Origin: Mytilus californianus
Lineage: Eukaryota
Length of the DNA stretch: 64,000 bases
Reading direction: 5' to 3'
Assembly: GCF_021869535.1 (NCBI RefSeq)
Contig: NW_026262686.1
Location: forward strand, 1,860,001-1,924,000
Part shown: in pieces, positions 6,976-60,733 of the stretch
How positions within the stretch are numbered: position 1 is the stretch's first letter
Layout: each line of letters starts with the position of its first letter
Made by a program: the position numbers and the translations under genes
The notes under the pieces: generated by a model
Told to the model about the DNA's origin: nothing
The model's input: only the letters and a program-made list of their open reading frames with translations
The model's database searches: none

Positions 6976-7654
6976 GAAAAGTTAGGAAAATAACAGCCGT
7001 ATTTTACGTGCTAAATGATCTATTTCAAGCATAAAAAATGCCAAAAGGTTTACAATTAAAATTCTAATATATCACCACCGATATATAACATAAATCCGAC
7101 CATAGTAATTAGTATGTCTTAACGGAAGTGCTCGCGGAGATATTGTTTTTTTTTTAGATACATACATTTGATATAACTACCAGTAAATTTCACATATATA
7201 CGTCAATAAGAATTTATATTTAGAAATTTCAATGTATCTAAGTAATGTTTTCTTGGTTTTGTGCACTGAACAGAAAAAAAGCACACACATTTATCAGAAA
7301 ACATAGCAAAATTATCTGGTATATTTTTTGTCATCCCATGATCGAGAGAAAACATCTACGTCATTTGGGATATGGATGATAGTTGTCTCATTGACAATCG
7401 TACCACATCTTTTTATTTTATTTGATATAAGTAAAGGAGATGCCAGGTAAAAGGCAGTAGGGCCGTAAACAAATGACACACATCTACAGGTCTTCAACCA
7501 TAAATAGGTGTTATGTCAAGTTCTTATTCGTCCCAGAGACATATGTGTATATATGTCTCTGTTCGTCCCTAGAATAAAAAAAAATCTTGAATAGGTTCAA
7601 CATAGACTAACAAAGATCTGTAATCAACATCCGATCCATAAAATGAAACAAAAC

Positions 7655-20080: not shown

Positions 20081-20584
20081 AACCAAAGTGCTTGTGAGCA
20101 CTAGAAGGTAAAGATTGCTTTCATTTTACAGTGTGAATTTAAACTATAACATGGCATTGTATTAAGTCAAAACCAACTTCTATTATGGACAAAGGAAGAT
20201 AACTCCAATCTTAATATTACTTTTCATTGCTTTTTTTGTTTTTTTTATCAAGTATGGTTAAGCACATGCACATCATTTTGTAACTTAAATATTTGAGTAG
20301 ACATCATCTATAACTGTTTGCCATGAACATGGTTAGGATCCAAATAATGTTCACTTTTCTGCACTATGTTGTGTGCTCTCAAAGGTAGGAATGAGGTCTG
20401 TGTAAATATCAAGTCAGTGAAATAAGGGTTTTAATTACATTCATGCAATCTTTACCCAAAAACTGTCTACCATAACATGTCAATGTGTGCTGAAACAGGT
20501 GTTTTTAACCAATAATCAATCAATCTTTCAAATGGGTTTGAACAAATTAACATTAAGTGTTATTTAAGTCTGGCTGGTCAGTTT

Positions 20585-21140
20585 TTACACATACCAATTT
20601 ATTTTTCTCTGATTTTATGCATACCAAATTATTTCTCTCAGATTTCTTACAAATCAAATTACTTTTCTCTCTAATTTTTTACATACCAAGTTATTTTATA
20701 CATACCATGTAATTTCTCTCTAATTTTATACATACCAAGTTATTTTATACATACCAAAGTTATTTCTCTCTGATTTTTATACATACCATGTAATTTCTCT
20801 CTGATTTCATACATACCAAGTTATTTCTCTCTGATTTTATACATACTAAGTCATTTCTCTCTGATTGTATACATACCAAGTTATTTCTCTCTCATTTTAT
20901 ACATACCATGTTATTTCTCTCTCATTTTATACATACCAAGTTATTTCTCTCTGATTATATACATACCAAGTTATTTCTCTCTCATTTTATACATACCAAG
21001 TTATTTCTCTCTCATTTTATACATACCAAGTTATTTCTCTCTGATTATATACATACCAAGTTATTTCTCTCTCATTTTATACATACCAAGTTATTTCTCT
21101 CTGATTATATACATACCAAGTTATTTCTCTCTGATTATAT
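20585..21140 (-). repeat. 30-bp tandem array derived from the UPB1 stop-codon region, about 18 copies
   Basis: Minus-strand unit ataatcagagagaaataacttggtatgtat = last codons + TAA + start of the 3'UTR. Confidence 0.92.
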
Positions 21141-30200: not shown

Positions 30201-33200
30201 ATCAGATAAACTTACCATAGAAATGGCCAAAATCCTTGTGAGCTGAAAAAGAAATCTCTGTTTAATGTTTCCAACATGTCTAACAGATAATATTGTGAAA
30301 ATCATGTGGTATAGACTGCAATGTTGACAACTGTGGCACATTCTAAAGCATGCAAAGATTGTTAACTTCATCAGAAGTCTTCCATAGCTCAGAACACTAC
30401 CAAGTCTATAAGTAAATTCTTTTCAGATGTTGAGCAACTCAAGATTGTCAAGCAAGCATGTACATGTAAATAAATAATGACCCCACCACTCTTGATTGAA
30501 AAATTTATCATTTTTTAGAAAAAATTGTCCAAATTTGTTTTATATATTCAGTTAAGGTCTGCTTCAGCTTTATGGAATTTTGCCCCCCCACCCCTTTCAA
30601 AAATCCTGGATCTGCCTCATTACCCCCTTGTATCACAAAGCTTTATTTCACTTAACACCTGCAGGTTAGGTGGTTTCACTTGGAACAAGTTTTTATGTCA
30701 CTGCCATATTAGAAACTTTAAAATCACAGCTGTGACCAACTGAGATCTTCAGCTCATATCTAAAAGTAAAGCTATTTTGTCACAAGGTCCACATTACTTG
30801 CCAAGGCCATGGATAGGATCTAAAGAATGTTTAACTCAATGCATTATGCTAGGTAAGTTTGAGATGAGGCCATGAATATAACTAAATATAGATGTCAAGC
30901 CAGTGACTATAGGGTTATGAATGAATTTAGTGCCAATTACACATTATGGTAAAAAAAAAGATTTAACTCACCTTTTCTTCCATCTGCTGAGGTAAATTCA
31001 TTGGGAAATTCTTCCTGAAATAAAACATCTCATATTTATTGTAAGTTTCGGTATTATTAATTCCTTTTTTCCTTACTTAATATATTGACAAACTTCAATT
31101 GATCATAAAGTTTAACATAATAACATCTCAGTGAACTAGTATACATTAGTTTAGGGGTTATCTCAAGCCCGTCTCTGGGTGTGGGATTTTCTCGCTGTGT
31201 TGAAGACCCATTGGTTGCCTTAGGCTATTTTCTGTTCTTTGGTCGATTAGTTGCTCTTTGACACATTCCCCTTTTCCATAATCTATTCTAGTCAATGGGT
31301 CATGTGACAGTTGAACACAAAAATGGCAAGAAAATAAAGCATGTAGCTCCCACAAAGTCTATACAGAGAACCCTGCAATACCTGGCAGCATTATTTGTCT
31401 AAATGAAACAACACAGTTCCAATGTCTCCCACTGCAGCAAATATTTCATTTGTTCAAAGGGATTATGACTCCAATAATTTTCCATTTCAAGTGCAGTGAT
31501 CATTTAGATTTCAAAGACAATGGTTATATAATCCATTGATATATATATGATTTTATCTAAAACTCAACAAGAAATGAAGGCTTGAGATTGCTTACAATTT
31601 TCCATATACATGATATAAAATGTAAAAAAATTATAATAAAAAAAGAAAATGTATATTTATAAACCAAGTAATTGCATTTTAAAAATTGTTAACCATGTGT
31701 TAACATTGGTGTTTCTATTTTAAGTCTAACACAAGCATGCATGTGTTGTCATACTTTGCTTACTCCCACTCATTATTCTAAGTTTCTGAAAATAGACCAA
31801 TCCAAAAAAGGGCTTATACATTACAACTGGTCATTGTTAAGCTGCTGATCAAATACAAGTTGGTCCATTCCATAGTTACTGAGAAAATGACATGCAAATA
31901 CCGATATATGATTTCATTTAACACACTGAACAATTTAAAGTATCAGCAAACAGGAAGTAGATATCTGACAGACAAAAAGACAGCAACTCATCAATATCAA
32001 GCTGCTGACCGAATATGATTTCATTGTCTTTTAGTGCTGAATCCTGAGTAAAGTGTTACTAACGGTAATATATTTATTGAACAAAACAACAAAAAAGGTT
32101 GGATAGTAACAGACAAGGTGATAACAATATATATCCAAGTGGGGGAAGAATATCAAATGCTTAAATTGTCAAATCAGGTAAAAACTTACTGTTCCCACTC
32201 TGTTAATAGCCACTGTAAAATAATGATTTGCAATGGCAGCATTTCTAGCCTCTATTGGCCACATAGGTTCACTGAAAATATAAACAGTGGCAAGAGTTAG
32301 CAATAGTGTCATTTCTAGCTTCTATTGGCCACATAGGTTCACTGAAAATATAAACAGTGGCAAGAGTTAGCAATAGTGTCATTTCTAGCTTCTATTGGAC
32401 ACATATAGGTTCACTGAAAATATAAACAGTGGCAAGAGTTAGCAATAGTGTCATTTCTAGCTTCTATTGGACACATATAGGTTCACTGAAAATATAAACA
32501 GTGGCAAGAGTTAGCAATAGTGTCATTTCTAGCTTCTATTGGACACATATAGATAGGTTCACTGAAAATATAAACAGTGGCAAGAGTTAGCAATAGTGTC
32601 ATTTCTAGCTTCTATTGGACACATATAGGTTCATTGAAAATATAAACAGTGGCAAGAGTTAGCAATAGTGTCATTTCTAGCTTCTATTGGACACATATAG
32701 GTTCATTGAAAATATAAACAGTGGCAAGAGTTAGCAATAGTGTCATTTCTAGCTTCTATTGGACACATATAGGTTCATTGAAAATATAAACAGTGGCAAG
32801 AGTTAGCAATAGTGTCATTTCTAGCTTCTATTGGACACATATAGGTTCATTGAAAATATAAACAGTGGCAAGAGTTAGCAATAGTGTCATTTCTAGCCTC
32901 TATTGGCCACATAGGTTCACTGAAAATATAAACAGTGGCAAGAGTTAGCAATAGTGTCATTTCTAGTTTCTATTGGACACATATAGGTTCATTGAAAATA
33001 TTAACAGTGGCAATAGTTAGCAATAGTGTCATTTCTAGCTTCTATTGGCCACATAGGTTCACTGAAAATATAAACAGTGGCAAGAGTTAGCAATAGTGTC
33101 ATTTCTAGCTTCTATTGGACACATATAGGTTCACTGAAAATATAAACAGTGGCAAGAGTTAGCAATAGTGTCATTTCTAGCCTCTATGGGCCACATAGGT

Positions 33201-36200
33201 TCACTGAAAATATAAACAGTGGCGAGAGTTAGCAATAGTGTCATTTCTAGCTTCTATTGGCCACATAGGTTCATTGAAAATATAAACAGTGGCAAGAGTT
33301 AGCAATAGTGTCATTTCTAGCTTCTATTGGACACATATAGGTTCATTGAAAATATAAACAGTGGCAAAAGTTAGCAATAGTGTAATTTCTAGCTTCTATT
33401 GGCCACATAGGTTCACTGAAAATATAAACAGTGGCAAGAGTTAGCAATAGTGTCATTTCTAGCTTCTATTGGACACATATAGGTTCATTGAAAATATAAA
33501 TAGTGGCAAGAGTTAGCAATAGTGTCATTTCTAACCTCTATTGGCCACATAGGTTCACTGAAAATATAAACAGTGGAGAGAGTTAGCAATAGTGTCATTT
33601 CTAGCTTCTATTGGACACATATAGGTTCACTGAAAATATAAACAGTGGCAAAAGTTAGCAATAGTGTCATTTCTAGCTTCTATTGGACACATATAGGTTC
33701 ATTGAAAATATAAACAGTGGCAAGAGTTAGCAATAGTGTCATTTCTAGCTTCTATTGGACACATATAGGTTCATTGAAAATATAAACAGTAGCAAGAGTT
33801 AGCAATAGTGTCATTTCTAGCTTCTATTGGACACATATAGGTTCATTGAAAATATAAACAGTGGCAAGAGTTAGCAATAGTGTCATTTCTAGCTTCTATT
33901 GGCCACATAGGTTCACTGAAAATATAAACAGTGGCAAGAGTTAGCAATAGTGTCATTTCTAGCTTCTATTGGCCACATAGGTTCACTAAAAATATATACA
34001 GTGGCAAGAGTTAGCAATAGTGTCATTTCTAGCTTCTATTGGCCACATATAGGTTCATTGAAAATATAAACAGTGGCAAGAGTTAGCAATAGTGTCATTT
34101 CTAGCTTATATTGGACACATATAGGTTCATTGAAAATATAAACAGTGGCAAGAGTTAGCAATAGTGTCATTTCTAGCTTCTATTGGACACATATAGGTTC
34201 ATTGAAAATATAAACAGTGGCAAGAGTTAGCAATAGTGTCATTTCTAGCTTCTATTGGACACATATAGGTTCATTGAAAATATAAACAGTGGCAAGAGTT
34301 AGCAATAATGTCATTTCTAGCTTCTATTGGACACATATAGGTTCATTGAAAATATAAACAGTGGCAAGAGTTAGCAATAGTGTAATTTCTAGCTTCTATT
34401 GGACACATATAGGTTCATTGAAAATATAAACAGTGGCAAGAGTTAGCAATAGTGTCATTTCTAGCTTCTATTGGCCACATAGGTTCACTGAAAATATAAA
34501 CAGTGGCAAGAGTTAGCAATAGTGTCATTTCTAGCTTCTATTGGACACATATAGGTTCACTGAAAATATAAACAGTGGCAAGAGTTAGCAATAGTGTCAT
34601 TTCTAGCTTCTATTGGACACATATAGGTTCACTGAAAATATAAACAGTGGCAAGAGTTAGCAATAGTGTCATTTCTAGCTTCTATTGGCCACATAGGTTC
34701 ACTGAAAATATAAACAGTGGCAAGAGTTAGCAATAGTGTAATTCCTATCTTCTATTAGCCACTTTATCATAAAATATTCAAAATGCTCTATAACCAAAAG
34801 GTGCCAATGTTAATAGTGAATCCTAACTTTCTTGATCAGTGATGGCGGCCAAAGTAAATTATTCTAAAACTGGACCAAAATTGACATTATTACACAAACT
34901 GTGCATAATTAAGGGATCAAGACTTTGTTATTTATTATGTGAGGTGCCAAAAAGAAGTAATTTAGTATTATTACTAATATCACAACTACTTGTGAATTTA
35001 TAGTATTTTGGCCTGCTTTAAAAAAACATTAAATTATCAATGCCAATTTTAGCCCTTCATGAACCTAATCCTTTAGAGCATACTACATGTAATATAAAGA
35101 AAGATAATCCAAATGTTTTCACAAATATTTGCTAGAGTTTATTTTTTGTTACAAAAAAGTTTGGTTTGTCTGTACAAAGGATCAAAATGTCAAAGAAACC
35201 AGAATTTGGAGTAAAAGTCTAAAATTGTCTAAACCTGTGGCTGAAAGATTAAATACAATCTCTATATACAGAGTACATGAGTACAAACATTAAAGCTCAA
35301 AACGTGGCTGAAGGATTAAATACAATCTCTTTACTCTGAGTACATGAGTACAAACCTTAAAGCTCCAACCGTGGCTAAAGGATCAAATACAATCTCTTTA
35401 CATGGGGTTCATGAGTACATAACTTAAAGCTCCAACTGTGGCTGAAGGATTAAATACAATCTCTATACATGGGGTTCATGAGTACATAACTTAAAGCTCC
35501 AACTGTGGCTGAAGTATTAAATACATTCTCTATACACTGAGTACATGAGTACATAACTTAAAACTCCAACCGTGGCTGAAGGATTAAATACAATCTCTAT
35601 ACATGGGGTTCATGAGTACATAACTTAAATTCCAACCGTGGCTGAAGGATTAAATACAATCTCTATACACTGAGTGCATGAGTACATACTTTAAATCTCT
35701 TACCGTGACTGAAGGATTAAATACAATCTCTATACACTGAGTGCATGAGTACATACTTTAAAGCTCCAACCGTGGCTGAAGGATTAAATACAATCTCTAT
35801 ACATGGGGTTCATGAGTACATAACTTAAAATTCATACCGTGGCTGAAGGATTAAATACAATCTCTATACACTGAGTGCAAGAGTACATACTTTAAAGCTC
35901 TTACCGTGACTGAAGGATTAAATACAATCTCTATACATGGGGTACATGAGTACATAACTTAAAGCTCCAACCGTGGCTGAAGAATTAAATACAATCTCTT
36001 TACACTGAGTGCATGAGTACATACTTTAAAGCTCTTACTGTGACTGAAGGATTAAAAACAATCTCTATATATTGAGTACATGATATAAAAAAGAAGATGT
36101 GGTATGATTGCCAATGAGACAACTCTCCACTAGAGACCAAATGACACAGAAATTAAGTACATACCTTAAAGTTCCAACTGTGGCTGAAGGATTAAAAACA

Positions 36201-39200
36201 ATCTCTATACACTGAGTACATGAGTATATAACTTAAAGCTCCAACAGTAGCTGAAGGATTAAATACAATCTCTATACACTGAGAACATGAGTACATACCT
36301 TAAAGCTCCAACCGTGGCTGAAGGATTAAATACAATCTCTATACACTGAGTACATGAGTACATACCTTAAAGCTCCATCCATGGCTGAAGGATTAAATAC
36401 AGTCTCTATACACTGAGTACATGAGTACATACCTTTAAGCTCTAACCGTGGCTGAAGGATTAAATACAATCTCTATACACAAGAGTACATGAGTACATAC
36501 CCCAAAGCTCCAACCGTGGCTGAAGGATTAAATACAATCTGTATACACTGAGTACATGAGTACATACCTCAAAGCTCCAACGGTGGCTGAAGGATTGAAT
36601 ACAATCTCTATACACTGAGTACATGAGTACATACCTCAAAGCTCCAACCGTGGCTGAAAGGATTAAATACAATCTCTATACACTGAGTACATGAGTACAT
36701 ACCTCAAAGCTCCAACCGTGGCTGAAGGATTAAATACAATCTCTGCACCATTAATACCATACATCATCCAATTCAAGGGATGATGTCGTCCATAACAAAT
36801 GTTTATACCAATTTTACCTGTAAACAATCAAAATCATACATAATTTTTCATGTTAAAAATACAAATCATATATAATTTTACCTGTAAACAATTACAAATT
36901 GTACATAATTCAACCTGTAAACAATTACAAATTGTAGATAATTTTACTTGTCATTTCTTATAAACAATTACAAATTGTGTATTATTTTACCTGTTGCTAA
37001 TGAAAGTAAATCCAGTGAAGGGTTTTGGATACATAACATTTATAAAGTGATAGTGTTTGAGACCTGCATTGCAATGTGGTATGGGACAAAAACGCTACAT
37101 TAGGCTTAAATTAAAATATTGTTTGTTTGCAGTTTACCGACCGACCCTCGAAAATCCGCCCGACTGTGAAAATTTTATTGCTTTTAATTTGAAGAAATTA
37201 TTTTTTATTTTTCTATTGACACAATCCGGAACTTCTGGTCGTTTCTGGAATTGATTTAAAGTCTGGGTCGATTACACGTTTCAAGTTCGGTTTTTCTTAC
37301 CTTCTTGTCATGCGTATATGGGACCGTTTAATAATAAAGCACATGGAGATTGTTTACAGGTATCGATGAAGACATGGAGGAGTACTTTGCGCTGTCGTTT
37401 TCTGTCAATTTTAAAACAAATAACAACCAAAAAAGTTTAATAGTAAACTGTTTTTACAGATTCAGACAGATATCATTGATGATTTGAGAACGCATGATGC
37501 AGCGGATATTCATAAAACCGACACGATAACCATTTCAATCTCAAACAGATCAGGTACAGAATCTCTTGAGCCTGACTTTATGGAACCAATATCAGTGGTT
37601 AAAAAAATTTGACAGCAGCCTGAAGTATGCCATAGTTTCTATAAAACGTTGTGAAGACAACAAGGATGAAACCACTTCTCCATGACTTCATGGATACCTG
37701 TAAACACGCCAGGAAGGGCGCATTTGAAATTTATAATCGATAGACAATGCCAAATCTATAAGAAGCCACAGAAACTACACAAAGATGTAAAGAAAATGAT
37801 TAGTTGGCTTGTAAAAATAAATATACTTTCTCTATGTTAAATCTATCTTCTATTGCAATGAGTATGCTCCTTTAGGATAAGGGGAGCTACCCTACTCATT
37901 GCAATTCTTCTCCCTCTTACAATATTAAATATACCCAAACAGTGTGGCTTGTGTGAATTGAATTAAAACATGTCCTTAGGAGCTATGCTGCCAATTTTTT
38001 ATGCAGTCAAAACATTTCAGTACAGACCATTTACTTTTAAAGGAGTGCTATTGATTTCACCCTGAAGTCTAAGATTTTTTTGGTTTTAATTAAAGCCTGA
38101 TCACATCAAAATATCTTTCAAAATATAACCTTATTACATATAATTAAATATTGTTAGATTTATGAAAACAGTCCGATGTCAAATATATTTTTTCAAGTTT
38201 CCTTTTTTTTTTAATTGAGAAAGATTCAATGGTTAATTTTTTTTATTGATAACACTCTTACATTGTCTTATGAATCTTTGATATCTACATTTTCCTAATG
38301 AAAATACTCTACTCATGAAAACTTTCTAGTAAAGAAGCATATGTCAGTGAACAATTTCTTTAAAACAATTCTAGTCATTCCTTGTTTATAAGATCTTATA
38401 AGTGTTCCAGTACTAGTATTTAATAATGTCATAAATTGGATAATCACACCATGTTTATATAGTTTCAATTTTGGTTGAAAAGTTTTTATCTGAAAATGCC
38501 TTATCGTGTACTTGGCTGGGGGACTATGGTAAGAACCAAGTAACGAGTCTACAAATAAACTGTACTTCACACTTTACTTCTTTTAATTTTTAATACAAGG
38601 CCATGCTACTGCACTGGCAGACGACAACTAACTTAATAATTAATAGCTAAAAACATGTTTCACCTTTTCCGACATAAGAGATAAATTGTGTGAGGCAGTC
38701 CCGATAACCAGAAGACCCAAAATAGGAATATAACAGCCTGTTCATTTCATGTTGGTTTTCAGTGTTTGTTGTTTTAAAAAAAAATTCTTCACAATAAACT
38801 TGGTTTGTGTAACTGCTTGTTTAAACTTCATTTTGGCTGATAAAATAAAATATTTTTCCTACCTACCGACCCTTCAGTCTGAAGGTACAGTCGGAAAACT
38901 GCAAACAAACATATTTTTAAGGTTGGCCTTATAAAAGATGACATTTTGAATTTCAGATCTGAACATTGTTAAAACACAAAATTGATCTAAAACAGTAGAG
39001 AGAGCTGAAAGAAGTAAGAAGCCTGAAGTGAACTTTTTAGGGTTAGCAATTTAGATATTCATCACTTCTAAGGGGCCACAATTGTTTTATTATACCAATC
39101 TGACAGTGGGAAGGCCATTAAACCATCAAAAAAGATTTGTATACTATAGTAAATGATTGTAGGAACACTTGCATTGGAAAATTATTTTGTGTCCAAGAAT

Positions 39201-42200
39201 TTCTCCTATGTCATGTATGTATAACAAAGTTAGACTTGTTCTGTAAAATATTGATGGCCCTGAAAAGGACTTCTTATGAGAGATATCCTCTGCACTAGAT
39301 GAATTCCAAGCCTTGTTCATTGTTGTTTGATCTTGTTTTCTCGTCACTTTATTGACTTTTAACCTGGCCTTTGCCCTTTTGTTTACATACACTGTGACAT
39401 CATTTTGATGGGAGATAACTTTTGTACAAATAAAGAAGCTCAAAAGGTAATGTGAATAATAGTCTTATTCAATGCATGGTGTAAATTTTTAGAGTTATTC
39501 ATCCTTCCTTGCATTTTAATGAAAATTAACTGAATTATTCCCTCTCACTTGATAATGTGTTATTGTTTAACATATATGTAAGGTATAATAATGATAATAA
39601 CTGCAGTATTTAGAGTCAAACACTATTCTTGCAGTATCAAGAGTACGTTTAACTTACCGAACTGTGTATCAAATACTTTATGTCCAGTATTGCCCTCCAT
39701 ATAATAGGTTGACTGAAAAATAAATAATCAATACAAGTATTTATATACATAATAAATAAATGAATAAAATAAATGTCAGCTTTAGCCCTCACCTAGTAAT
39801 TTTATTTATCTTATTAGGGGATCTAAATCATAAATGAAGGTCAAGGTCATCCATTTGGTATTGACCTCCTTCGTTTCTAAAAATGATGCATCAAGTGCTA
39901 GCAAACTCCAAACAATTGGGTAAGGGTATAATTGATTAGTAGATAAATACTTAATTTATCTCAAAATATAAATTGAATTATTGTTAATTCAGTTAGTCAA
40001 GTTAAAGTACATTTCCTGTTTTATAATGATACTTGCTTGTGCTAACTTATAATGTTTAACAATTTCTTGTGTTATAATGTTTAATAATTTCTTGTGCTAA
40101 CTTATTATGTTCAATAATTTCTTGTGCTAACTTATAATGTTTAACAATTTCTTGTGCTAACTTATGTTTAATAATTTCTTGTGCTAACTTATAATGTTTA
40201 TTATTAGTCGTCCCACTATCTATATCACTCTGCTCAGCTCTTAATAAAACAACATATCACAGCTTTGTGATGTCATATACATTGACCTGGCATTAACAAC
40301 TTTGACCTGGACATATCAACAACGTCATAATGTATAAACCGACGTTAATAAGTTTGACCCGAACTTATCAAGACATCTCCCGGGTTGCTGGTGAAACAAA
40401 GAAAACACTTATTTCTTTCATGCAAAATACGCAAATACAACCTAATTAATCGATTATCTGGTCATCTGCATATTGGTATTGTAAAATATAAGCTGCTCGA
40501 CACAATATGAAGCCTTTTTGAACTCGTTCGCTGCCCTCACTCGACAAAAAGCTTCATATTGTGACTCGCAGCTGATATTTTCAGTATCAATATGCAGACA
40601 ACCTGATAATCGGTACATAATTTCATGTGCTAACTTATAATATTTAATAATTTCATGGGCTAACTTATAATGTTTAATAATTTCTTTGGCTAACTTATAA
40701 TGTTTAAGCACAACAAAGTCTTGTGCTAACTTATCATGTTCAATCACAATAAAATCTTGTGCTAACTTATCATGTTTAATCACAATAAAATCTTGTGCTA
40801 ACTTATCATGTTTAATCACAATAAAATCTTGTGCTAACTTATCATGTTTAATCACAATAAAATCTTGTGCTAACTTATCATGTTTAATCACAATAAAATC
40901 TTGTGGTAATGTTTAATCATAATAAATTCTATTGCTGACTTATTTAATATGTTTAATCATAATAAATTCTATTGGTAACTTATTATGTTTAATCATGATA
41001 AACCCTTGTACTAACTGATTATGTTTACTTCTTATTAAAGTTTAATTGGATTGTTTTCTGACCTCATTAAAGTCTCCTACTCTTGGTATATGATTTTTCC
41101 TAGACTTCCCTAAGTACTGCCCTGTGTTAGAGATCACCACTGAAATGGAAAAACAAGTACTTTATGTATACATATTGTAAAATGCTCACCATCTAAGAGG
41201 ATAGAATTCTCAAGAGAGGGGAGATAATTACCTTTTTGTTCTACCTCCATGATTAGCATTTCAGAATAAATAACTTCAAAGACAGGGGAGATAATTACCT
41301 GTTAGTTCTATGATTACCATCTCAGAGGAAACTAGACATCATTGAGATGGGAGCTATGTCTGTGGGCCCCGCTGACCTTGAACTTTGACCTAGGAAGTTG
41401 TACAAACATTATGACACATCCTCTGGTGTTGGTTAATATACATGTCAAGTATAAAGTATAAAATCATAACGGTTCTCTAGATATAGAGCGGACACAATTT
41501 GTTACGGACTGACGGACGGACAGACTGATCACTATAGGGCGACCCGCCTAGGTGGGGCCATAATAACTTTCAAGACAGGAGAGATAATTACCTTTTCATT
41601 CTACAACCATGATCACCATCTAAGAGGAAATAACTTTCAAGACATTGCTGACAAGGGAGATAATTACTTGTTTGTTCTACCACCATGATCACCATCTTAG
41701 AGGAAACAACTTTCAAGACAGGGGAGATAATTACATGTTAGTTTTACCACCATGATCACAATCTCAGAGGAAATATCTTTCAAGACAAGGGAGATAATTA
41801 TCTGTTAGTTTTACCACCATGATCACTATCTAAGAGGATAGAACTTTCAAGACAGGGGAGATAATCATATGTTAGTTTTACCACCATGATCACAATCTCA
41901 GAGGAAATAACTTTCAAGACAAGGGAGATAATTGTCTGTTAGTTTTATCACCATGATCACTATCTAAGAGGATAGAACTCTCAAGACAGGGGAGACAATT
42001 ACCTGTTCGTTCTACTACCATATGATAAGCATCTCAGAGGAAATAACTTTCAAGACAGGGGAGATAATTACCTGTTAGTTCTACAACCATGATCAGCATC
42101 TAAGAGGATAGAACTCTCAAAACAGGGGAGATAATTACCTGTTCGTTCTACCGCCATGTTTAGCATCTCAGAGGAAATAACTTTCCAGACAGGGGAGATA

Positions 42201-45200
42201 ATTATCTGGTTATTTCTACAACCAAGATCAGCATCTTAGAGGATAGAACTCTCAAAACAGGGGAGATAATTACCTGGTTGTTCTACCACCATGATAAGCA
42301 TCTCAGAGGAAATAACTTATTTGATTTGAACTATCATTGAGTTTGTCAACCAGCCTCTGAATTAAACAACACTTTTTTTTTCTAAGGACTAAGGTGGTAT
42401 AAAAATTTTCTTGAAAGTGATAATTAGTGCACCTGATCCAGATTTTTATCATTCTGACATACTGGCAGAGGAGTACAACTCAAAAGTTCCTAACTAGCTT
42501 TGCACTTGTTTTCAATCTCTCTATTAATCAGGAGATGAAAACGTGATCACAGGAAAAATTTTGATTGGCTAATGATCACTGATTATGATTGTTTCCTTTG
42601 AGAAAAGTTTAAAATGGGGAACAAAACAAAAAATTTGAGTGAAGATTTTCACAAATCAGGTTTTAGGGCTATTTTCACAATCAGGATTTTGTAATCAGGA
42701 CAAGAGGTTTATATATATATCGTGTAGTGCATGCCATAGTCCTATAAGTTGGCAGGTATGAAGATGAAAAGGAAGAAGAGAAAGACAACAATTTTCTATA
42801 AAAAAAATGTGACAAGCCAAAGATGTGTATTACCTGCTGTGTTAGCTAAAATGTCTCCATGATCAGCATCACACTCCAGTATAGGGGACACTATAACCAT
42901 GTTGTATTTACCTGCTGTGTTAGCTAGAATATCTCCATGATCAGCATCAGGCTCCAGTATAGGGGACACTATAACCATGTTGTATTTACCTGCTGTGTTA
43001 GCTAAAATGTCTCCATGATCAGCATCACGCTCCAGTATAGGGGAAACTATAACCATGTTGTATTACCTGCTGTGTTAGCTAGAATATCTCCATGATCAGC
43101 ATCACGCTCCAGTATAGGGGACTCTATAACCATGTTGTATTACCTGCTGTGTTAGCTAGAATATCTCCATGATCAGCATCACGCTCCAGTATAGGGGACA
43201 CTATAACCATGTTGTATTACCTGCTGTGTTAGCTAGAATATCTCCATGATCATCATCACGCTCCAGTATAGGGGACACTATAACCATGATAACCATGTTG
43301 TATTTACCTGCTGTGTTAGCTAGAATATCTCCATGATCAGCATCACGCTCCAGTATAGGGGACATTATAACCATGTTGTATTTACCTGCTGGGTTAGCTA
43401 GAATATCTCCATGATCAGCATCACGCTCCAGTATAGGGGACACTATAACCATGTTCTATTTACCTGCTGTGTTAGCTAGAATGTCTCCATGATCAGCATC
43501 ACGCTCCAGTATAGGGGACACTATAACCATGTTGTATTTACCTGCTGTGTTAGCTAGAATATCTCCATGATCAGCATCACGCTCCAGTATAGGGGACACT
43601 ATAACCATGTTGTATTACCTGCTGTGTTAGCTAGAATATCTCCATGATCAGCATCAGGCTCCAGTATAGGGGACACTATAACCATGTTGTATTTACCTGC
43701 TGTGTTAGCTAGAATATCTCCATGATCAGCATCACGCTCCAGTATAGGGGACACTATAACCATGTTGTATTTACCTGCTGTGTTATCTAGAATATCTCCA
43801 TGATCAGCATCACGCTTCAGTATAGGGGACATTATAACCATGTTGTATTACCTGCTGTGTTAGCTAGAATATCTCCATGATCAGCATCACGCTCCAGTAT
43901 AGGGGACACTATAACCATGTTGTATTTACCTGCTGTGTTAGCTAGAATATCTCCATGATCAGCATCACGCTCCAGTATAGGGGACACTATAACCATGTTG
44001 TATTTACCTGCTGTGTTAGCTAGAATATCTCCATGATCAGCATCACGCTCCAGTATAGGGGACACTATAACCATGTTGTATTTACCTGCTGTGTTATCTA
44101 GAATATCTCCATGATCAGCATCACGCTTCAGTATAGGGGACATTATAACCATGTTGTATTACCTGCTGTGTTAGCTAGAATATCTCCATGATCAGCATCA
44201 CGCTCCAGTATAGGGGACACTATAACCATGTTGTATTTACCTGCTGTATTAGCTAGAATATCTCCATGATCAGCATCACGCTCCAGTATAGGGGACACTA
44301 TAACCATATTGTATTTCTTTGCCAGCTGAAAAAAGTTTTAATAATATATATTGACTATTTACATGTATGGTTTTGAAAACAAAAGGAAGATTCTTAACTA
44401 AAATCTCATCAAAGGGCAAGAAACTTCCTCAAGTTGAAAGACAATAGAAGTCTGTTTATCGATCTGGTTTTTTTAAGGCAACTTCAATGATGTTGGTTAA
44501 CATTTGTTCTCACATAACTTGACTAAGAAAAAACTTTCTCAGTTCGGTTGCTTGAGTTATTATCATGCAAAAAAATCAAAGCAAAATTTAAGAAATAAAC
44601 ATTAATAAATTTATACCTAGAAATTATTTATAAAAGATCAAACTAGAGAATAAAAAACATACAATATTACATAGGATGGCCTGTCATGGTTGACAATTTA
44701 AGAAGTATTAGACATGTTGGTTGTTGCTTTACTTCCCTAGACACTTATTTACATTTTGTAGGTCATCAGATCTTAAAATGAACTCAGGCATAAAATTCCT
44801 CATCAGTAACAAAGATGAAAGCTTAATCAAAGCCACTCAGCTGTAAAATAAGTGATAAGTACCGTCCATCTAATGGCACAAGGTCAGAATATCTTCCAAA
44901 GATGCATTTGCACACTAAATTAAATAGCTGTTGGTCTTCAACCTGGTTTTGGAGGCAGCCACAATAGCAGAAGTAAATACTCCGAAAATCCCCGTAATTT
45001 TGGTTGAGACAAAGAATAAACTGTTGACACAGAGATGTGTCTCGCCTGTTGTCAAAAATTTGAAAAAATGTGAATCTGATGGACAGCAACATTGCTTATT
45101 AATTCAAAGTCGCTGGACCATGACCTAGAGTCAGGGCCTCAAAATTGTTGTCAAATTGATATAAACTGATAGTAATGCAACTTTACAGAAAGTATCATTA

Positions 45201-48200
45201 CCTATCACAAGTAGTTCCTATCAAACTGACTTAAGCAGAAAACTTAACAATTGTTGATGCCACTGCCGCTGGCAAAGCAACACCTATGCCTCGCATTTCG
45301 TGAATTTCGTCGCTGACGATACAAAAACTCTAATGATTACTGAAAATTTAGGATTTATCTGCTATTCAGATTTTTTAGTTTATATCATGTTTATGAAGAA
45401 AGTAGATAATTTATACCTCCTGTCACATTTTATGTGGAAGGGGGAGATAATTCACACATCTTGTAACATTTTATTTGGAAGGGGGGAGATAATTCACACC
45501 TCTTGTAACATTTTATGTGGAAGGGGAGACAATTCATACCTATTGTGACATCTTTTTTGGGAAAGGAATGTTGAAGGGGGAGATAATTCATACCTATGGT
45601 GATATCTTTTTGGGGAAGGGAGATAATTCACACCTCTTGTAACATTTTTGTGTGGAAGAGGAAGATAATTCATACCTATGGTGATATCTTTTTGGGGAAG
45701 GGAGATAATTCATACCTCTTGTAACAATTTTGTTGTAGCTCCATCTTCTGCTGATTCAGCAAATTCACACCATGGGTGTTTCTCACGTGTACAGAAGGCA
45801 AATGGCATTGCTGTAAAATAAATGTGTGATTTTAATTTCCCAACAGCTTACTTTTGGTAAAAACTTGTCATAAATCAAAAAATTTCTGACACTTATCTTT
45901 TGGCAATAAAATATTCAAGTAGTTATATATATTCAAGCCATGGTAAGAAAACATTCAAAAATATATATGCCAATAATACTTTTTCACTTCAACTCTTATT
46001 GAGCAATTTCGCAAGGTTCTTGTACAATGTATTATCATTTTTGTATTTTGATATAAGTTGGATTATATTTTGCATTTTGTAATTAATAGTAATACATAAA
46101 AGTTGATTACCCTGCTCATGTAAAGAAAAACTCCATAGAAAAGTTTAACACTGTCTCTTGCCAAATTCAACATACATTTAAAAACATGGTGAATATTGGT
46201 AGCACCTAAGACAAAGTATTGTCCTCTGTTTCACTACAAAAGCACAAAACAAGTTTTTTTCTATTTCTAGACATGCTGAATAGTTAATTTTGCTCAACAT
46301 TTTATTGTTCAAATTAGCATTCCCAGGATAGGGTATGACATCATAATACTAACAAAACTGAAAATAACGGGACATTTCTTAACCTTTTACTTGACACAGT
46401 TATCTACCCTGATTTTTTCAACTTACTCCATGCTTCTTGTAAACAAATGACATTGACACCACATAAACTGGCCATCTCTATAATCTCTGATATTCTGTTG
46501 TGTAGAGATTCAACCTGAAACAGAAACCAGGACAATAGAAACACAACTTATAAACTTGCCATTTCTCTTCATATGTATCTAATATATACTGTTATGTTAA
46601 GATTCATATACTGTTATGTTAAGATTCAATCTCTTACAGAAATCAGATAGCATCAAAAACATAAAAAGGTAATAGGCAAACTTACACCACATACATAGTG
46701 CTCAGTGTTAACACCACATACATAGCGCTCAGTGTTAACACCACATACATAGTGCTCAGTGCTAACACCACATACATAGTGCTCAGTGCTAACACCACAT
46801 ATATAGTGTTCAGTGCTAACACCACATATATAGTGTTCAGTGCTAACACCACATATATAGTGCTCAGTGTTAACACCACATATATAGTGCTCAGTGCTAA
46901 CACCACATATACAGTGCTCAGTGTTAACACCACATACATAGTGCTCAGTGTTAACACCACATACATAGTGCTCAGTGCTAACACCACATATACAGTGCTC
47001 AGTGTTAACACCACATACATAGTGCTCAGTGCTAACACCACATATATAGTGCTCAGTCCTAACACCACATATATAGTGCTCAGTGCTAACACCACATATA
47101 TAGTGCTCAGTGCTAACACCACATATATAGTGCTCAGTGTTAACACCACATATATAGTGCTCAGTGCTAACACCACATATATAGTGCTCAGTGTTAATAC
47201 CACATATATAGTGCTCAGTGTTAACACCACATATATAGTGCTCAGTGCTAACACCACATATATAGTGCTCAGTACTAACACCACATATATAGTGTTCAGT
47301 GTTAACACCACATATATAATGCTCAGTCCTAACACCACATATATAGTGCTCAGTGTTAATACCACATATATAGTGCTCTGTGCTAACACCACATATATAG
47401 TGCTCTGTGCTAACACCACATATATAGTGCTCAGTGCTAACACCACATATATAGTGCTCAGTGATAACACCACATATATAGTGCTCAGTGTTAACACCAC
47501 ATATATAGTGCTCCGTGCTAACACCACATATATAGTGCTCCGTGCTAACACCACATAGATAGTGCTCCGTGCTTACACCACATATATAGTGCTCAGTGCT
47601 AACACCACATATATAGTGCTCAGTGCTAACACCATTCACACTTTATTTTCTGCTGTTTGCAAAAGCTCGCAATTTGATACCCTTGCTCCCTATACACACT
47701 TGAAAAGAATAATCTAATATGCAACTGCAAAGTCCATGTTTGGTACATAGAAATAATGAGTAAAAAGTAAAATAGGAATTGCCAATAAATGCCATATGTC
47801 ATGTCGAAATATTACCTGTTTTGATACAGACTTTGTGGTAGGCAGTTCATGGTTTAAATCTTACGTGTTTTGATACAGGCTCTGTAGTAGGCATTTTATG
47901 GATCTAACCTTCAGTCAGGGGTGCTACTTGTACAAGTAATTTTTATTTACTTGAAGAAGTAAGTATTAATATACTTATATAAGTAAATTTGTAGGATACT
48001 TATACAAGTGTATTTTATTTAATTTACTTGTATAGGTAAAAAAAAATGGGCTTAGTTATGTCCCTTAGACATTCAGATTTTTTTACTTATACAAGTAAAA
48101 AAGTCAGCCTATCTTCTTTTCTTGAATTCTTAGGACTTCTTTGCTCTAATAGAATTTTTGATTGTCTGTCCTTTGCAGATGTCTTTACTAATCATTTAAG

Positions 48201-51200
48201 TGTAATTTCATGGACAATGAAAATCTTATTTGTCTTTTATCTTCAGAACACTGCTCATTTACAAGCCCCCAAGGGGCAATTTTTGAAGGCCTTGTGCAAT
48301 TACTTAAGATCTTTGCTCAATCAGTTTCTTTGTTGAATTAATGAGATGAAACATTGAACTCTAATCAAACATTATGAGCTAACCTGAGAAAAATTGTTAA
48401 AGTCATGTTTATACATCTCAAAACTTGAGAATTTTTGTAGGATTGTAAAAAAAAATTACTTATACAAGTAAATTTTTGAGAAAATTAAGGGGAGATTATT
48501 CAAACATAATTAACTTCTATAAGTAGATTTTATTTACTTCTTCAAGTAAATAAAGATTACTTGTACAAGTAGTACCCCTGACTGACCCTACCTGTTTTGA
48601 TACAGACTCTGTAGTAGGCAGTTCATGGATCTAACCTTACCTGTTTTGATACAGACTCTGTAGTAGGCAGTTCATGGATCTAACCTTACCTGTTTTGATA
48701 CAGACTCTGTAGTAGGCAGTTCATGGATCTAACCTTACCTGTTTTGATATAGACTCTGTAGAAGGCAGTTCATGGATCTAACCTACACTGTTTTGATACA
48801 GATTTTGTAGTAGGCAGTTCGTGGATCTAACCTTACCTGTTTTGGTACAGGCTCTGTAGTAGGCACAATAATCTGATTTTGTATAGCACCAATTCTGACT
48901 ACTCTTGGTGGACGGAGAGATTCTTTTTCTGCAGTAAAACAACTGCCTTTTACTTCAAACTGTCTTTTATCTGCCAAATCTCTGGCCTCCTTTGGAAACT
49001 CTAGTTGTCTGTGTAAAACATTAACAAAATTAATTTGGTTTTGACCCTATAACATGTATAAGGGTTTTCAACATGTTCAAGATAGACAGTCAGGGGACTT
49101 ATTGAAATAAGTGATTTTAAATCACTTATTTCAGTAGCAAATTCAAAGTTTTGTCACAAACACATGCAAATTGTGATTTTGTAGTTTTACCAAAATTTTA
49201 AACACATAGGTTTAGATAATATCATTTCATTAGTAAAATTGAAAAAAATAAACTTTTTGCTTCTTTTAAGCAGCAAGGTTTATGCCTTTGATGCAATCAT
49301 TAAGCTGCAAATTCTATTTTAGTTAAAGAAATGCTATAAAAATGGCTTTACATAATGAACAATGAACTGATACTTTCTTAACAGATTTTTCCCAGCATTG
49401 TGAGTATTTTTCCTGTAAAATTCAAGGTTTCATCTTATAGATTATGTAATAAAATTCTACTGTTCGCCATCAAAATTTCACTGTTCGGGGGTGTTGAAAT
49501 TAGTCAGTCAAGGGTGTAACTTGAATAAGTTATTAGAGAAAAATAACATACATGTGTTATTACGGGTACTTTCTCTTAATCTGTAGTAACATATGTTTGT
49601 TATCAGTTAAATGTACCATAAAATTTTTTATTTTCAGTGGGTACTTGGGAATTCTTGAAACTTGCGCAGTAACTTAAAACATAACCTTGAAAACTTATTT
49701 TCAAATTCAATTAATACATTTTTGATCAACCATGGTAAATCAATGAGACAAGGCTTTTAAGTCAATAAGTGATAACTTCCTTAGCTGTAATAACAAGGCT
49801 TAGTTATTACAGGCATTTAACTTATTACATGAGACACTTGGGAATGACTAGGAAGCTTGCTCAGAACCTCATTACATGCTCTTATCATTATTTATTACAA
49901 TAAATAAATACATTAATATTGTGATATATATAGGAGAAAAGGCTTTGAAGAGATGTAGAGAAGCTGTAATAACACCCTTTAGTTATTACAGGCATATTTT
50001 TTCTGTAATAACATGGGTGTGTCATGCATGATTGGCATACTATGGGCTGTTATATCTTTCTATCGTTTAGTATACATAAAGCATTGCAAAGACAATAATA
50101 ATATCAATAGAACTAGTACACAATTTAACAAAATAAAGGATGTATAATGCCCCTTTGAAACATGTAACATACATATGTTATCACAGATTTTTGATTTTTC
50201 AGCCCTCAATAACAAATGTATGTTATTTTTCTCTAATAACTTATTTAAGTTAGACCCTTAACTGTTAGTGGGGGTTATTAAAATAATGATACTTAAAGAA
50301 GTGATTTTTTGGAAGGAAATTGAGGTATGATACTTAAACAAGTGATTTTTATGTCATTATCCTAGATTTAGTACAAGGTCATCACCTGACATGACCTGGT
50401 CATTCCTATCAACACAGATATTGGTTCTGATAATTTTAGCAACATAATTAGTCCCTGGATCATCAGTATTCTATATTTAAAGCTACAATAAAATTAAATC
50501 ACTTAGTCTAGTGATTAATTTGTACTACTTAAATAGGTGATTATCAAAGAAAGACAACTCTTACTTCCAACCTTTATGGACATAATGTTACTTGAATCAG
50601 TGATTTAGAAAATCACTCATTTAAGTAATTCCCCTGACTGATAGAAGGCAAAACTTGCATTTCACCCCTATGTTCTAATTTAGCAATGTTACCAATGTTA
50701 TTTGCAGATGCTGATCCAGCATTTTGAAAAAGGGGGGCCCAGGTGCCCCCAAAGTAGCCAACTTTTGTAGTGGAAAAGGTAAAATGTCTGAATTATCCAT
50801 TAATGTAGCTCCATAAGGGGGCGCCTAGGCACTCTGGCCTCTTCCTCTATAAATCCATCTCTTTTAAAATTAAATACATCATAGATGAATTTAGCCAAAT
50901 TAGGGTAAGTTTGCAAAACAGTTTTAGAGAAGATTTTTCTAAACTTTAACAGGCAACAACTGATGTCAAACACCAAATGATTGGAAATGTTTATAGGACC
51001 TCTGGGCCAATTGTTCCAACAGTGCAGGATTTAATTTGAAAATTTAAATACTGTTCACCTTTTAGAGTATACTAGTTAGCTTATGTTAAGACGAGATCTC
51101 TGCAACAGCACAACCTCGTGAAGAGCCGATTGACTTCTTTTGGACCATCGGATTGTCAGACTATTTGTCCTTCTGACTAATAAGGGACTGTCAAACTATC

Positions 51201-57907: not shown

Positions 57908-58870
57908 GCTGGTACTTAGACAGCTATAGATTGCTCTAGATTTTGAACATCTGTATGTAGTAAGGTACTTAGACATGCAGCTATAGATTGCTCTAGATTT
58001 TGAACATCTGTAGTTACTTAGACAGCTATAGATTGCTCTAGATTTTGAACATCTGTAGGTACTTAGGCAGCTATAGATTGCTCTAGATTTTGAACATCTG
58101 TAGTTCCTAAGACAGCTATAGATTGCTCTAGATTTTGAACTTCTGTAGTTACTTAGACAGCTATAGATTGCTCTAGATTTTGAACTTCTTTAGTTACTTA
58201 GACAGCTATAGATTGCTCTAGATTTTGAACTTCTTTCGTTATTTAGACAGCTATAGATTGCTCTAGATTTTGAACTTCTGTAGTTACTTAGACAGCTATA
58301 TAAAAATTTATTTAGACAGCTATAGATTGCTCTAGATTTTGAACTTCTGTAGTTACTTAGACAGCTATATGAAAATTAGATTGCTCTAGATTTTGAACTT
58401 CTGTAGGTACTTAGACAGCTATAGATTGCTCTAGATTTTGAACTTCTTTAGTTACTTAGAAAGCTATAGATTGCTCTAGATTTTGAACTTCTGTAGGTAC
58501 TTAGACAGCTATAGATTGCTCTAGATTTTGAACTTCTTTAATTACTTAAACAGCTATAGATTGCTCTAGATTTTGAACTTCTGTAGTTACTTAGACAGCT
58601 ATAGATTGCTCTAGATTTTGAACTTCTGTAGTTACTTAGACAGCTATAGATTGCTCTAGATTTTGAACATCTGTAGGTACTTAGGCAGCTAAAGATTGCT
58701 CTAGATTTTGAATTTCTGTAGTTACTTAGACAGCTATAGATTGCTCTAGATTTTGAACTTCTTTAGTTACTTATATATAGACAGCTTATAGATTGCTCTA
58801 GATTTTGAACTTCTGTAGTTACATAGACAGCTGTAGATTGCTCTAGATTTTGAAGTTTTGAAGGTACTTG
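57908..58870. repeat. 45-bp tandem array, about 21 copies
   Basis: Unit gttacttagacagctatagattgctctagattttgaacttctgta. Confidence 0.95.
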
Positions 58871-60700: not shown

Positions 60701-60733
60701 AGGCATTCTTTTTATCATTTTGTTTTAATTTAG

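What the first reader, a model, noticed from the sequence alone, without database searches (positions are those of the whole stretch)
42824..44325. Almost an entire coding exon (exon 5) amplified 19-fold, with 18 decoy donors and one predicted in-frame isoform
Seen: the unit is exon 5 from KYNM to NTA plus the donor CAG|gtaa(a)t, fused directly to the next unit. 78-bp units are in frame (26 codons). 77-bp units shift the frame into an immediate stop (GNTTWL*). The first extra unit is 78 bp, so using donor 2 (exon end 44163) would insert 26 aa in frame between the catalytic Glu and Lys. Donor 3 and all later donors lie beyond a 77-bp unit and give a premature stop. Co-segregating variants at 43783 and 44094 (311 bp apart) show a 4-unit block duplication, i.e. 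real stepwise growth. Each unit also reads CTAAC..CAG|GT, which resembles a recursive-splice site but lacks a pyrimidine tract. Inference: this is a natural test of 5' splice-site competition and may produce NMD-targeted transcripts.
Basis: partly seen in the sequence, partly recalled or inferred. Interest (0 to 1): 0.85.

Follow-up and report, generated by a model that had tools for sequence, protein, structure and literature searches.

The report
Silent splice-donor minisatellite in mussel UPB1
In the California mussel's beta-ureidopropionase gene, the end of exon 5 and its splice donor are copied 19 times in tandem; the gene model and the sampled RNA fit use of the first copy only, so this is a harmless-looking "mirage" splice-junction repeat, a kind already known from amphioxus and human F7.

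Summary
Window 42826-44316 holds a 77/78-bp tandem array (19.1 copies, 95% alike). Each unit is the last 72 nt of coding exon 5 of a minus-strand beta-ureidopropionase (UPB1) gene plus 5-6 nt of the intron, giving one real and 18 decoy donors.

The frame arithmetic is right: donor 2 would add 26 aa in frame, and donors 3-19 hit a stop.

The splicing inference is not borne out so far.
- The Mytilus californianus RefSeq protein (384 aa) threads exactly through the window using donor 1.
- RNA depth fits about one exon-5 copy per transcript.
- An assembled M. coruscus mRNA, from a genome with the orthologous array, carries exon 5 once.
- In M. coruscus the first extra unit is 77 bp, so the "in-frame isoform" is not conserved.

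M. edulis and M. trossulus lack the array. M. trossulus keeps a 7-nt direct repeat 77 bp apart, which suggests birth by microhomology slippage.

Seven of 15 arrays in this gene span a splice junction (1.2 expected, P about 4e-5).

This is a new member of a known kind (amphioxus "mirages", the human F7 intron 7 VNTR). Earlier notes of this scan report the same kind in other genes of this genome. Why the arrays cluster at junctions remains open.

The parts
44241..44325 (-). Authentic coding exon 5 of UPB1 (85 nt, [28 protein letters not shown] plus 1 nt). Acceptor ttttcag| at 44326; donor 1 is CAG|GTAAAT.
   Evidence: RefSeq protein P0389 residues 153-180 map here exactly. PDB alignment to human beta-ureidopropionase. 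RNA depth about 25x.
42834..44240 (-). 18 decoy units. Each holds 5-6 nt of intron start (GTAA(A)T region) plus the last 72 nt of exon 5, ending in a donor. Eleven decoy donors read GTAAAT like the real one; seven read GTAATA.
42826..42833 (-). GTAATACA: the original intron 5 start after the last unit. It holds the downstream copy of the AATACA(A) microhomology.
   Evidence: The outgroup introns start gtaatacaaaac (M. trossulus) and gtaataaaaaac (M. edulis).
44086..44162 (-). Unit 3, the first 77-bp unit. It shifts the frame and brings the stop (GNTTWL*) for donors 3-19. It is identical to unit 7.
43775..43851 (-). Unit 7, identical to unit 3 and 311 bp away: a mark of higher-order (about 4-unit) duplication.
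43221..43307 (-). 87-bp unit with a 9-bp internal duplication (ATGGTTATC).
45716..45810 (-). Exon 4 (95 nt). Its donor heads a 40-bp junction array at 45404-45733.
   Evidence: RNA loose ends at 45810 join to exon 3.
41063..41139 (-). Exon 6 (77 nt; contains catalytic Lys195 in RKNHIP).
   Evidence: 44 RNA reads join 41063 to exon 7.
48585..48865 (-). Sister array: exon 2 donor, 49 bp x 5.7.
36810..36951 (-). Sister array: exon 8 acceptor, 33 bp x 4.4.
35232..36744 (-). Sister array: exon 8 donor, 67 bp x 22.5.
32240..34756 (-). Sister array: exon 9 acceptor, 72 bp x 35.
20583..21140 (-). Sister array: end of exon 14 (stop codon) plus the donor CTTG|GTATGT of a 3'UTR intron, 30 bp x 18.

Best explanation
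This is a 'mirage'-type splice-junction minisatellite in intron 5 of the Mytilus californianus beta-ureidopropionase gene.

Origin (inferred). A 77-bp segment, made of the last 72 nt of exon 5 plus the first 5 nt of the intron, was duplicated in tandem between two copies of a short direct repeat (AATACAA). This probably happened in the common ancestor of M. californianus and M. coruscus, after the split from the M. edulis group.

Growth (inferred from structure). The array has since grown and turned over by slippage or unequal exchange. Signs of this are the 311-bp blocks, the 77/78/87-bp variants, and 19 units in one species against about 11 in the other.

Splicing (supported by the annotation, the RNA depth and the orthologous mRNA, not by counted junction reads; the rule itself is inferred). 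The splicing machinery pairs the only acceptor of exon 5 with the first donor downstream. Eleven decoys are identical to the real donor and its 72-nt exonic context, so the choice must be by position (exon definition, or 5'-to-3' first-come), not by sequence. The 18 decoys simply lie inside the intron and are removed with it.

Function. The array most likely has none. Its practical effect is to mislead gene prediction.
For: Array and units.

Gene identity and model:
- The M. californianus RefSeq protein XP_052103343.1/XP_052103344.1 (384 aa) threads exactly through 14 window exons, with exon 5 at 44325-44242.
- The exon 4-6 peptide is collinear with human beta-ureidopropionase, E 8e-24.

RNA run X4:
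- Exons 4, 5 (first unit) and 6 have depths of about 40x, 25x and 44x.
- Four bins covering 43318-44065 have depth 0.
- The residual depth sits at 44066-44252 and 42757-43317. Reads carrying the AAC allele (12 of 12 at 44248) tie with consensus units there.
- Summed exon-5-like depth is about 35x, or roughly one copy per transcript.

Orthologous array in M. coruscus: about 11 units, first extra unit 77 bp. The M. coruscus mRNA contig (L012) is 99-100% identical to that genome's exons and has exon 5 once.

Outgroups: M. edulis and M. trossulus have no array. The 7-nt direct repeat lies at offset 77 in M. trossulus (2 of 300 shuffles reach it).

The unit is unique to this locus in the genome.

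Young or homogenised units: about 2% from consensus, with identical consensus in both species, while the flanking intron is about 82% identical.

Precedents: PMC3087553 and PMC1557585.
Against: - No explicit count of exon5-exon6 junction reads was obtained. The joint table was truncated.
- Only about 6% of one RNA run was sampled, so low-level decoy use (a few percent, or NMD-degraded) is not excluded. The depth argument alone bounds donor-2 use only loosely.
- An assembled contig and a Gnomon model show the major isoform only.
- M. edulis shows only 4 nt of the microhomology, and a single origin versus recurrent origin in the two species is not resolved.
- Plain slippage does not explain why 7 of 15 arrays in this gene span splice junctions.
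Confidence: 0.8

Rival explanations
1. Regulatory decoy array. The 18 extra donors capture U1 and are used in a fraction of transcripts, giving PTC-containing mRNAs destroyed by NMD. Copy number would then tune UPB1 output.
For: Eleven decoys are identical to the real donor with its full exonic context. All donors from the third on give a stop. NMD would hide such products from steady-state RNA-seq. The array persists in two species.
Against: - Summed exon-5-like RNA depth is no more than one copy per transcript, and depth is zero over 748 nt of the array.
- The RefSeq model and the M. coruscus mRNA show only the 85-nt exon.
- Copy number differs two-fold between species, and the M. edulis group has no array with the same 384-aa protein.
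- In human F7 the equivalent decoys stay silent.
Confidence: 0.08
2. Protein-diversifying repeat. Donor 2 is used to make a UPB1 isoform with 26 extra residues duplicating the strands between the catalytic Glu and Lys.
For: The first extra unit is 78 bp and in frame in this assembly. A database protein of M. coruscus (CAC5365627.1, 444 aa) contains three extra units.
Against: - That 444-aa model needs a non-standard ANTA|ANTAG join and is contradicted by the 384-aa mRNA contig of the same species.
- In M. coruscus the first extra unit is 77 bp.
- All other Mytilus and animal orthologues are collinear at about 384 aa.
- Donor 2 is the weaker GTAATA type.
Confidence: 0.03
3. Assembly artefact: a collapsed or expanded repeat created by the assembler.
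For: Long near-identical arrays are error-prone to assemble. Short-read contigs cannot span it.
Against: - Array words are present at many-fold the flanking depth in three read sets from two studies.
- A contig of run X2 bridges the real donor into unit 2 (record 11, 44189-44278).
- An independent assembly of M. coruscus has the orthologous array.
- The array has structured variants rather than perfect copies.
Confidence: 0.02

Closest known systems
Amphioxus 'mirages': minisatellites spanning exon-intron boundaries (Adh3, globin genes BflGb6/BflGb9), as described in PMC3087553
   Same: Tandem units contain an exon end plus its splice signal. Both donor-side and acceptor-side arrays occur. Regular splicing is not disturbed. 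Length differs between haplotypes or species, and units evolve in concert with the edge copies excluded. All of this is seen here.
   Different: The phylum differs (mollusc, not cephalochordate). This array is larger (19 units, 1.5 kb). It is one of seven junction arrays in a single 32-kb gene, with orthologous and lineage-specific arrays across four Mytilus species.
Human F7 intron 7 37-bp VNTR, whose first element spans the exon 7 donor (Borensztajn et al. 2006, PMC1557585)
   Same: The authentic donor is followed by identical pseudo-donors that stay silent. The most upstream site is chosen by position, not by strength.
   Different: The F7 result rests on 50 minigene constructs; here silence is inferred from annotation, depth and an orthologous mRNA. 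The mussel unit carries 72 nt of exon (nearly the whole exon), so the decoys have the full exonic context. There are 18 decoys here.
Recursive splice sites (AG|GT ratchet points in long introns)
   Same: Each unit ends CAG|GTAA and has a CTAAC branch-point-like motif 7 nt upstream of the CAG.
   Different: There is no pyrimidine tract, and the CTAAC branch A lies only about 10 nt upstream of the AG. The defining 3' splice-site half is therefore missing (sequence). No RNA evidence was found.
Intron gain or exon creation by tandem duplication of AG|GT-containing segments (Rogers' model, as discussed in PMC3087553)
   Same: Tandem duplication of a segment with a splice signal; units could in principle be recruited as new exons.
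   Different: The units here lack an acceptor, so no new exon or intron has been formed. The copies lie wholly within the existing intron.

Membership tests
Mirage-type splice-junction minisatellite | Head-to-tail repeat with a minisatellite-size unit | tested here: met
   78 bp x 19.1, 95% matches.
Mirage-type splice-junction minisatellite | Unit spans an exon-intron boundary and carries the splice signal | tested here: met
   72 nt of exon 5 plus GTAA(A). There are 19 AGCAG|GTAA sites. The exon is fixed by the RefSeq protein threading.
Mirage-type splice-junction minisatellite | The edge copy is the authentic boundary used in mRNA, and regular splicing is kept | tested here: met
   The 384-aa RefSeq model uses donor 1. 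RNA depth is about one copy per transcript. The M. coruscus mRNA has exon 5 once. Junction reads were not counted directly.
Mirage-type splice-junction minisatellite | Length instability or polymorphism | tested here: inconclusive
   Between species the feature holds: 19 units versus about 11, and none in the M. edulis group. Within the species there are only rough differences in word depth among runs, which the tool says are not copy numbers.
Beta-ureidopropionase (CN_hydrolase, PF00795) | Sequence membership and the Glu-Lys-Cys triad | tested here: met
   E 8e-24 to PDB 8pt4/6ftq/2vhh. LQEAW (Glu118), RKNHIP (Lys195) and NICYGRHH (Cys232) are present in the window exons. The precomputed Pfam hit on the orthologues is PF00795.
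Recursive splice site | A functional 3' splice site (pyrimidine tract plus AG) directly abutting a regenerated GT donor | tested here: not met
   ACACAGCAG precedes the GT: it is purine-rich with no tract, and the branch-like CTAAC is too close.
Alternative 5' splice sites coupled to NMD | Observed use of the alternative donors in RNA | tested here: inconclusive
   No sign in depth, annotation or the orthologous mRNA. However, junction rows for RNA were not shown, and NMD would deplete such products.

The most novel reading that the evidence does not exclude
Mytilus may have a mutational process aimed at splice junctions, for example template switching where replication meets polymerase or spliceosome paused at exon boundaries, or repeated re-seeding of arrays from the selectively frozen exon copy.

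In this one gene, 7 of 15 tandem arrays span a splice junction (1.2 expected).

New junction arrays also appear to have arisen separately in different lineages:
- exon 3 acceptor in M. edulis and M. trossulus;
- exon 5 donor, exon 9 acceptor and exon 14 donor in M. californianus and M. coruscus;
- exon 6 donor in M. coruscus only.

The exon 5 array would then be one readable, datable birth event of that process.
Probability: 0.3. Interest if true: 0.7.

Novelty: new member of a known kind. Interest (0 to 1): 0.36.

Why it matters
The array itself is probably neutral, but three things make it useful.
1. It is a clean natural case in which 11 decoy donors share the real donor's sequence and 72 nt of exon context, and the annotation, RNA depth and the orthologous mRNA point to the first donor. 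That would favour choice by position and extend the human F7 result to a mollusc.
2. With M. edulis and M. trossulus as unduplicated outgroups, its birth can be reconstructed to the base (a 7-nt direct repeat 77 bp apart). This is rarely possible for minisatellites.
3. It shows how such arrays corrupt annotation: the M. coruscus database protein of 444 aa reads through three decoy units.

The unexplained clustering of arrays at splice junctions, in this gene and, by the scan's other notes, across the genome, is the part worth a genome-wide study.

Tried and rejected
- A PF00795 search of the whole genome found other nitrilase-family loci but not this gene, because its exons are too short.
- Read laying (5,601 letters, within the operators' limit) did not list the RNA joints exon 4-5 and 5-6. 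Its table keeps the best-supported rows, and DNA-contig joints in a nearby high-copy element filled it. The single call is spent, so decoy use could only be bounded from depth.
- The representative search with exon 8 gave mostly fragments. The first full-length pick (P0016) proved to be protist-like. The second search, with the M. coruscus protein, gave the Mytilus set.
- Microhomology at the expected offset was looked for in outgroups for four other junction arrays (exon 3 acceptor, exon 6 donor, exon 9 acceptor, exon 14 donor). None was convincing. The 7-nt run for the exon 6 array lies inside the neighbouring 36-bp repeat, not at the unit edges.
- The origin of the 67-bp array in intron 5 (41200-42318) stays unresolved. 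It resembles exon 5 weakly (z about 4), shares AATTATCTCCC with the intron 4 array, is local only, and has 1.3 units in M. coruscus.
- A third protein search with a typed donor-2 junction peptide was not run, because the query would be repeated typed text.
- No structure or complex prediction was needed.
- Literature searches for this kind of repeat in Mytilus or other molluscs found nothing.

Full report
**1. What is there**

TRF reports a 78-bp tandem array at 42826-44316 with 19.1 copies and 95% matches. An equally good 311-bp period is also reported. On the minus strand each unit reads GTAA(A)TACAAC...GCTAACACAGCAG.

Splitting at AGCAG|GTAA gives 19 donors. The first exon end is at 44241 and the last at 42834. 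Unit lengths in order are 78, 77, 78, 78, 78, 77, 78, 78, 77, 78, 78, 78, 87, 77, 77, 77, 78, 78.
- Five decoy units are identical to the consensus.
- The rest differ at 1-4 places, about 2% overall.
- Units 3 and 7 are identical to each other and 311 bp apart.
- One unit has a 9-bp internal duplication.

**2. The gene**

The minus strand encodes beta-ureidopropionase (UPB1, nitrilase superfamily).
- The peptide of exons 4-6 aligns without a gap to human beta-ureidopropionase residues 152-207, E 8e-24, and to the Drosophila enzyme.
- A cluster look-up gave XP_052103343.1/XP_052103344.1, "beta-ureidopropionase-like [Mytilus californianus]", 384 aa.
- That protein threads exactly through 14 exons of the window, 383 of 384 residues; the missing residue is a split codon.

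This fixes both the species and the gene model. Exon coordinates:

| Exon | Coordinates |
|---|---|
| 1 | 51811-51710 |
| 2 | 49010-48837 |
| 3 | 46517-46425 |
| 4 | 45810-45716 |
| 5 | 44325-44241 |
| 6 | 41139-41063 |
| 8 | 36817-36705 |
| 9 | 32273-32190 |
| 14 | 21207-21121 (with the stop) |

**3. Frames**

With exon 6 starting at 41139:
- Donor 1 gives ...ILANTA|VVISNTG.
- Donor 2 adds [26 protein letters not shown] in frame.
- Every later donor passes the 77-bp unit 3 and meets a stop in GNTTWL*.

Twelve donors, including the real one, read CAG|GTAAAT. Seven read CAG|GTAATA. Donor 2 is of the weaker type.

The CTAAC...CAG|GT motif has no pyrimidine tract. It fails the defining half of a recursive site.

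**4. Which donor is used**

(a) The RefSeq model uses donor 1, and both listed accessions give the same 384-aa protein.

(b) RNA run X4 is the same species label, stranded, with about 6% of the run read.
- Depth is about 40x over exon 4, about 44x over exon 6 and about 25x over the first copy of exon 5.
- Depth is 0 in four bins covering 43318-44065.
- Small depth lies at 44066-44252 and 42757-43317.
- All 12 reads over 44248 carry the AAC allele that the decoy consensus has.
- So the 3' parts of ordinary exon5-exon6 reads match consensus units better than the reference's first copy.
- The bins with residual depth are those holding the outermost units whose 3' ends are consensus (units 2, 15, 16, 18).
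- Summed, exon-5-like depth is about 35x, that is about one copy per transcript. This step is inference from depth.
- The tool's joint table was cut before the RNA joints. Loose ends did confirm the exon 3-4 and exon 6-7 joins.

(c) M. coruscus has the orthologous array (section 5). A 1,792-nt Logan contig from SRR13891810 is 99-100% identical to its exons, is fully spliced, encodes 384 aa and has exon 5 once, followed directly by exon 6.

(d) The 444-aa M. coruscus database protein (CAC5365627.1) reads three extra units through an odd ANTA|ANTAG join. That mRNA contradicts it, so it is an annotation artefact caused by the array.

Taken together, the first donor is the one used. Low-level decoy use is not excluded.

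**5. History**

Loci for the orthologues were fetched from M. coruscus (L009), M. edulis (L010) and M. trossulus (L011).
- M. coruscus has the same array with an identical consensus unit and about 11 units. Its first extra unit is 77 bp, so donor 2 is out of frame there.
- M. edulis and M. trossulus have a single exon 5 followed by gtaataaaaaac... and gtaatacaaaac....
- In M. trossulus, AATACAA occurs in the exon (from nt 11) and at intron positions +3 to +9, exactly 77 bp apart. Only 2 of 300 shuffles reach a 7-nt run at that offset. M. edulis keeps 4 nt.
- The joint of the 77-bp units (GTAATACAAC) is what slippage between these two copies would give. The 78-bp type differs by one A in the A-run.

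The array was therefore most likely born by a microhomology-mediated tandem duplication in the californianus/coruscus lineage. A recurrent origin at the same microhomology cannot be ruled out.

The flanking intron is only about 82% identical between M. californianus and M. coruscus. The units, in contrast, are about 98% like a consensus that both species share. So the present units are young, or are kept alike with the conserved exon: the usual turnover of a minisatellite.

The unit occurs nowhere else in the 1.65-Gb genome.

**6. Context: one of many**

Within the 32-kb gene, 15 tandem arrays make up about a third of the sequence. Seven have a unit that spans a splice junction.

| Junction | Period x copies |
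|---|---|
| exon 2 donor | 49 bp x 5.7 |
| exon 4 donor | 40 bp |
| exon 5 donor | 78 bp x 19 |
| exon 8 acceptor | 33 bp x 4.4 |
| exon 8 donor | 67 bp x 22.5 |
| exon 9 acceptor | 72 bp x 35 |
| exon 14 donor | 30 bp x 18 |

- The exon 14 array was noted earlier in the scan as a "stop codon" array. The M. coruscus mRNA splices CTTG|GTATGT, 4 nt after the stop codon, to a 3'UTR exon. The M. californianus counterpart of that exon, with its tttttcag acceptor, is at 19593. So this array too is a donor array, inside a 3'UTR intron.
- If units fell at random in the collapsed gene, 1.2 would span a junction. Seven of 15 has P about 4e-5, or 2e-6 for the 13 short-period arrays.
- Across the four species, some arrays are shared (exon 2, 4 and 8 donors). 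Others are lineage-specific: exon 3 acceptor in edulis/trossulus; exon 5 donor, exon 9 acceptor and exon 14 donor in californianus/coruscus; exon 6 donor in coruscus only.
- Copy numbers differ widely. For example, the exon 9 acceptor array has 35 copies against 3.3, and the exon 2 donor array has 5.7 against about 50.

Earlier notes of this scan report the same kind of array in other genes of this genome: ANKS3, RIMOC1, an adenylate cyclase, tepsin and GINS2. I used these as leads only.

**7. Comparison with what is known**

Tandem repeats spanning exon-intron boundaries were named "mirages" in amphioxus Adh3 and globin genes. There they do not disturb splicing, vary in length, and have an unknown mechanism (PMC3087553).

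In human F7, a 37-bp VNTR starts at the exon 7 donor. Fifty constructs showed that the pseudo-donors are functional but silent, because the most upstream site is taken by a 5'-to-3' process (PMC1557585).

The mussel array meets the structural features of a mirage that I could test. Within-species polymorphism was not measured. Full-text searches found no description of this kind of repeat in Mytilus or other molluscs.

**8. Verdict**

- The structural reading is right.
- The functional inference (competition, an in-frame isoform, NMD) is not supported by the evidence at hand, though rare events remain untested.
- The array is a new member of a known kind and is probably neutral.
- The open and more interesting point is the strong clustering of arrays at splice junctions, for which plain slippage gives no reason.

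Noticed in passing
window 20583-21140 and 19593 (minus strand); L009 40312-41010 and 42117: The '30-bp stop-codon array' is really a donor-junction array. The M. coruscus mRNA splices CTTG|GTATGT (4 nt after the stop codon) to a 3'UTR exon. The M. californianus counterpart of that exon, with its tttttcag acceptor, is at 19593. The array therefore lies in a 3'UTR intron, not in the mature 3'UTR.
   Followed up: partly
L009 (M. coruscus GCA_011752425.2, CACVKT020001147.1), protein CAC5365627.1: The deposited 444-aa UPB1 model reads through three decoy exon-5 units (ANTA|ANTAGKYN...). An RNA contig of the same species encodes the normal 384 aa, so this is an annotation artefact caused by the array.
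   Followed up: yes
window 41200-42318 (minus strand), interrupted at about 41340-41570: A 67-bp array in intron 5 whose units carry a donor-like AACAG|GTAATTATCTCCCC. Its origin is unclear: it resembles exon 5 weakly and shares AATTATCTCCC with the intron 4 array. It is local only, with 1.3 units in M. coruscus. It is interrupted by a very high-copy element (word depth about 2x10^5 in DNA runs) that also draws RNA reads.
   Followed up: partly
L009 20507-20785; L010 10053-10623; L011 5409-5845: Lineage-specific junction arrays in the orthologues: an exon 6 donor array (89 bp x 3) only in M. coruscus, and an exon 3 acceptor array (84 bp x 6.7, and 180 bp x 2.4) only in M. edulis and M. trossulus.
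   Followed up: partly
window 1375-5334: A 38-bp x 102 array (about 4 kb) outside UPB1. On the minus strand its unit reads TCTTAG|GGTAAGAC, which is both acceptor-like and donor-like. It may be another junction array of a neighbouring gene.
   Followed up: no
window 7652-9262, 46684-47634, 57978-58869, 59242-60701: Further long minisatellites (56 bp x 29, 27 bp x 35, 45 bp x 20, 47 bp x 31). About 30% of the whole window is tandem array. The 27-bp array lies in intron 2, 167 nt upstream of exon 3, without a junction.
   Followed up: no
window 44248: All 12 RNA reads show G on the plus strand (AAC instead of AAT, synonymous Asn). In that animal the real exon 5 matches the decoy consensus. This could be an allele, or exchange between the exon and the array.
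   Followed up: no
G000 C1:94739868-94740620, C99 (three loci), C154, C88: Intronless or long-ORF CN_hydrolase matches elsewhere in the genome: four full-length 250-aa matches without introns, and biotinidase/vanin-like longer ORFs. They are unrelated to this locus.
   Followed up: no
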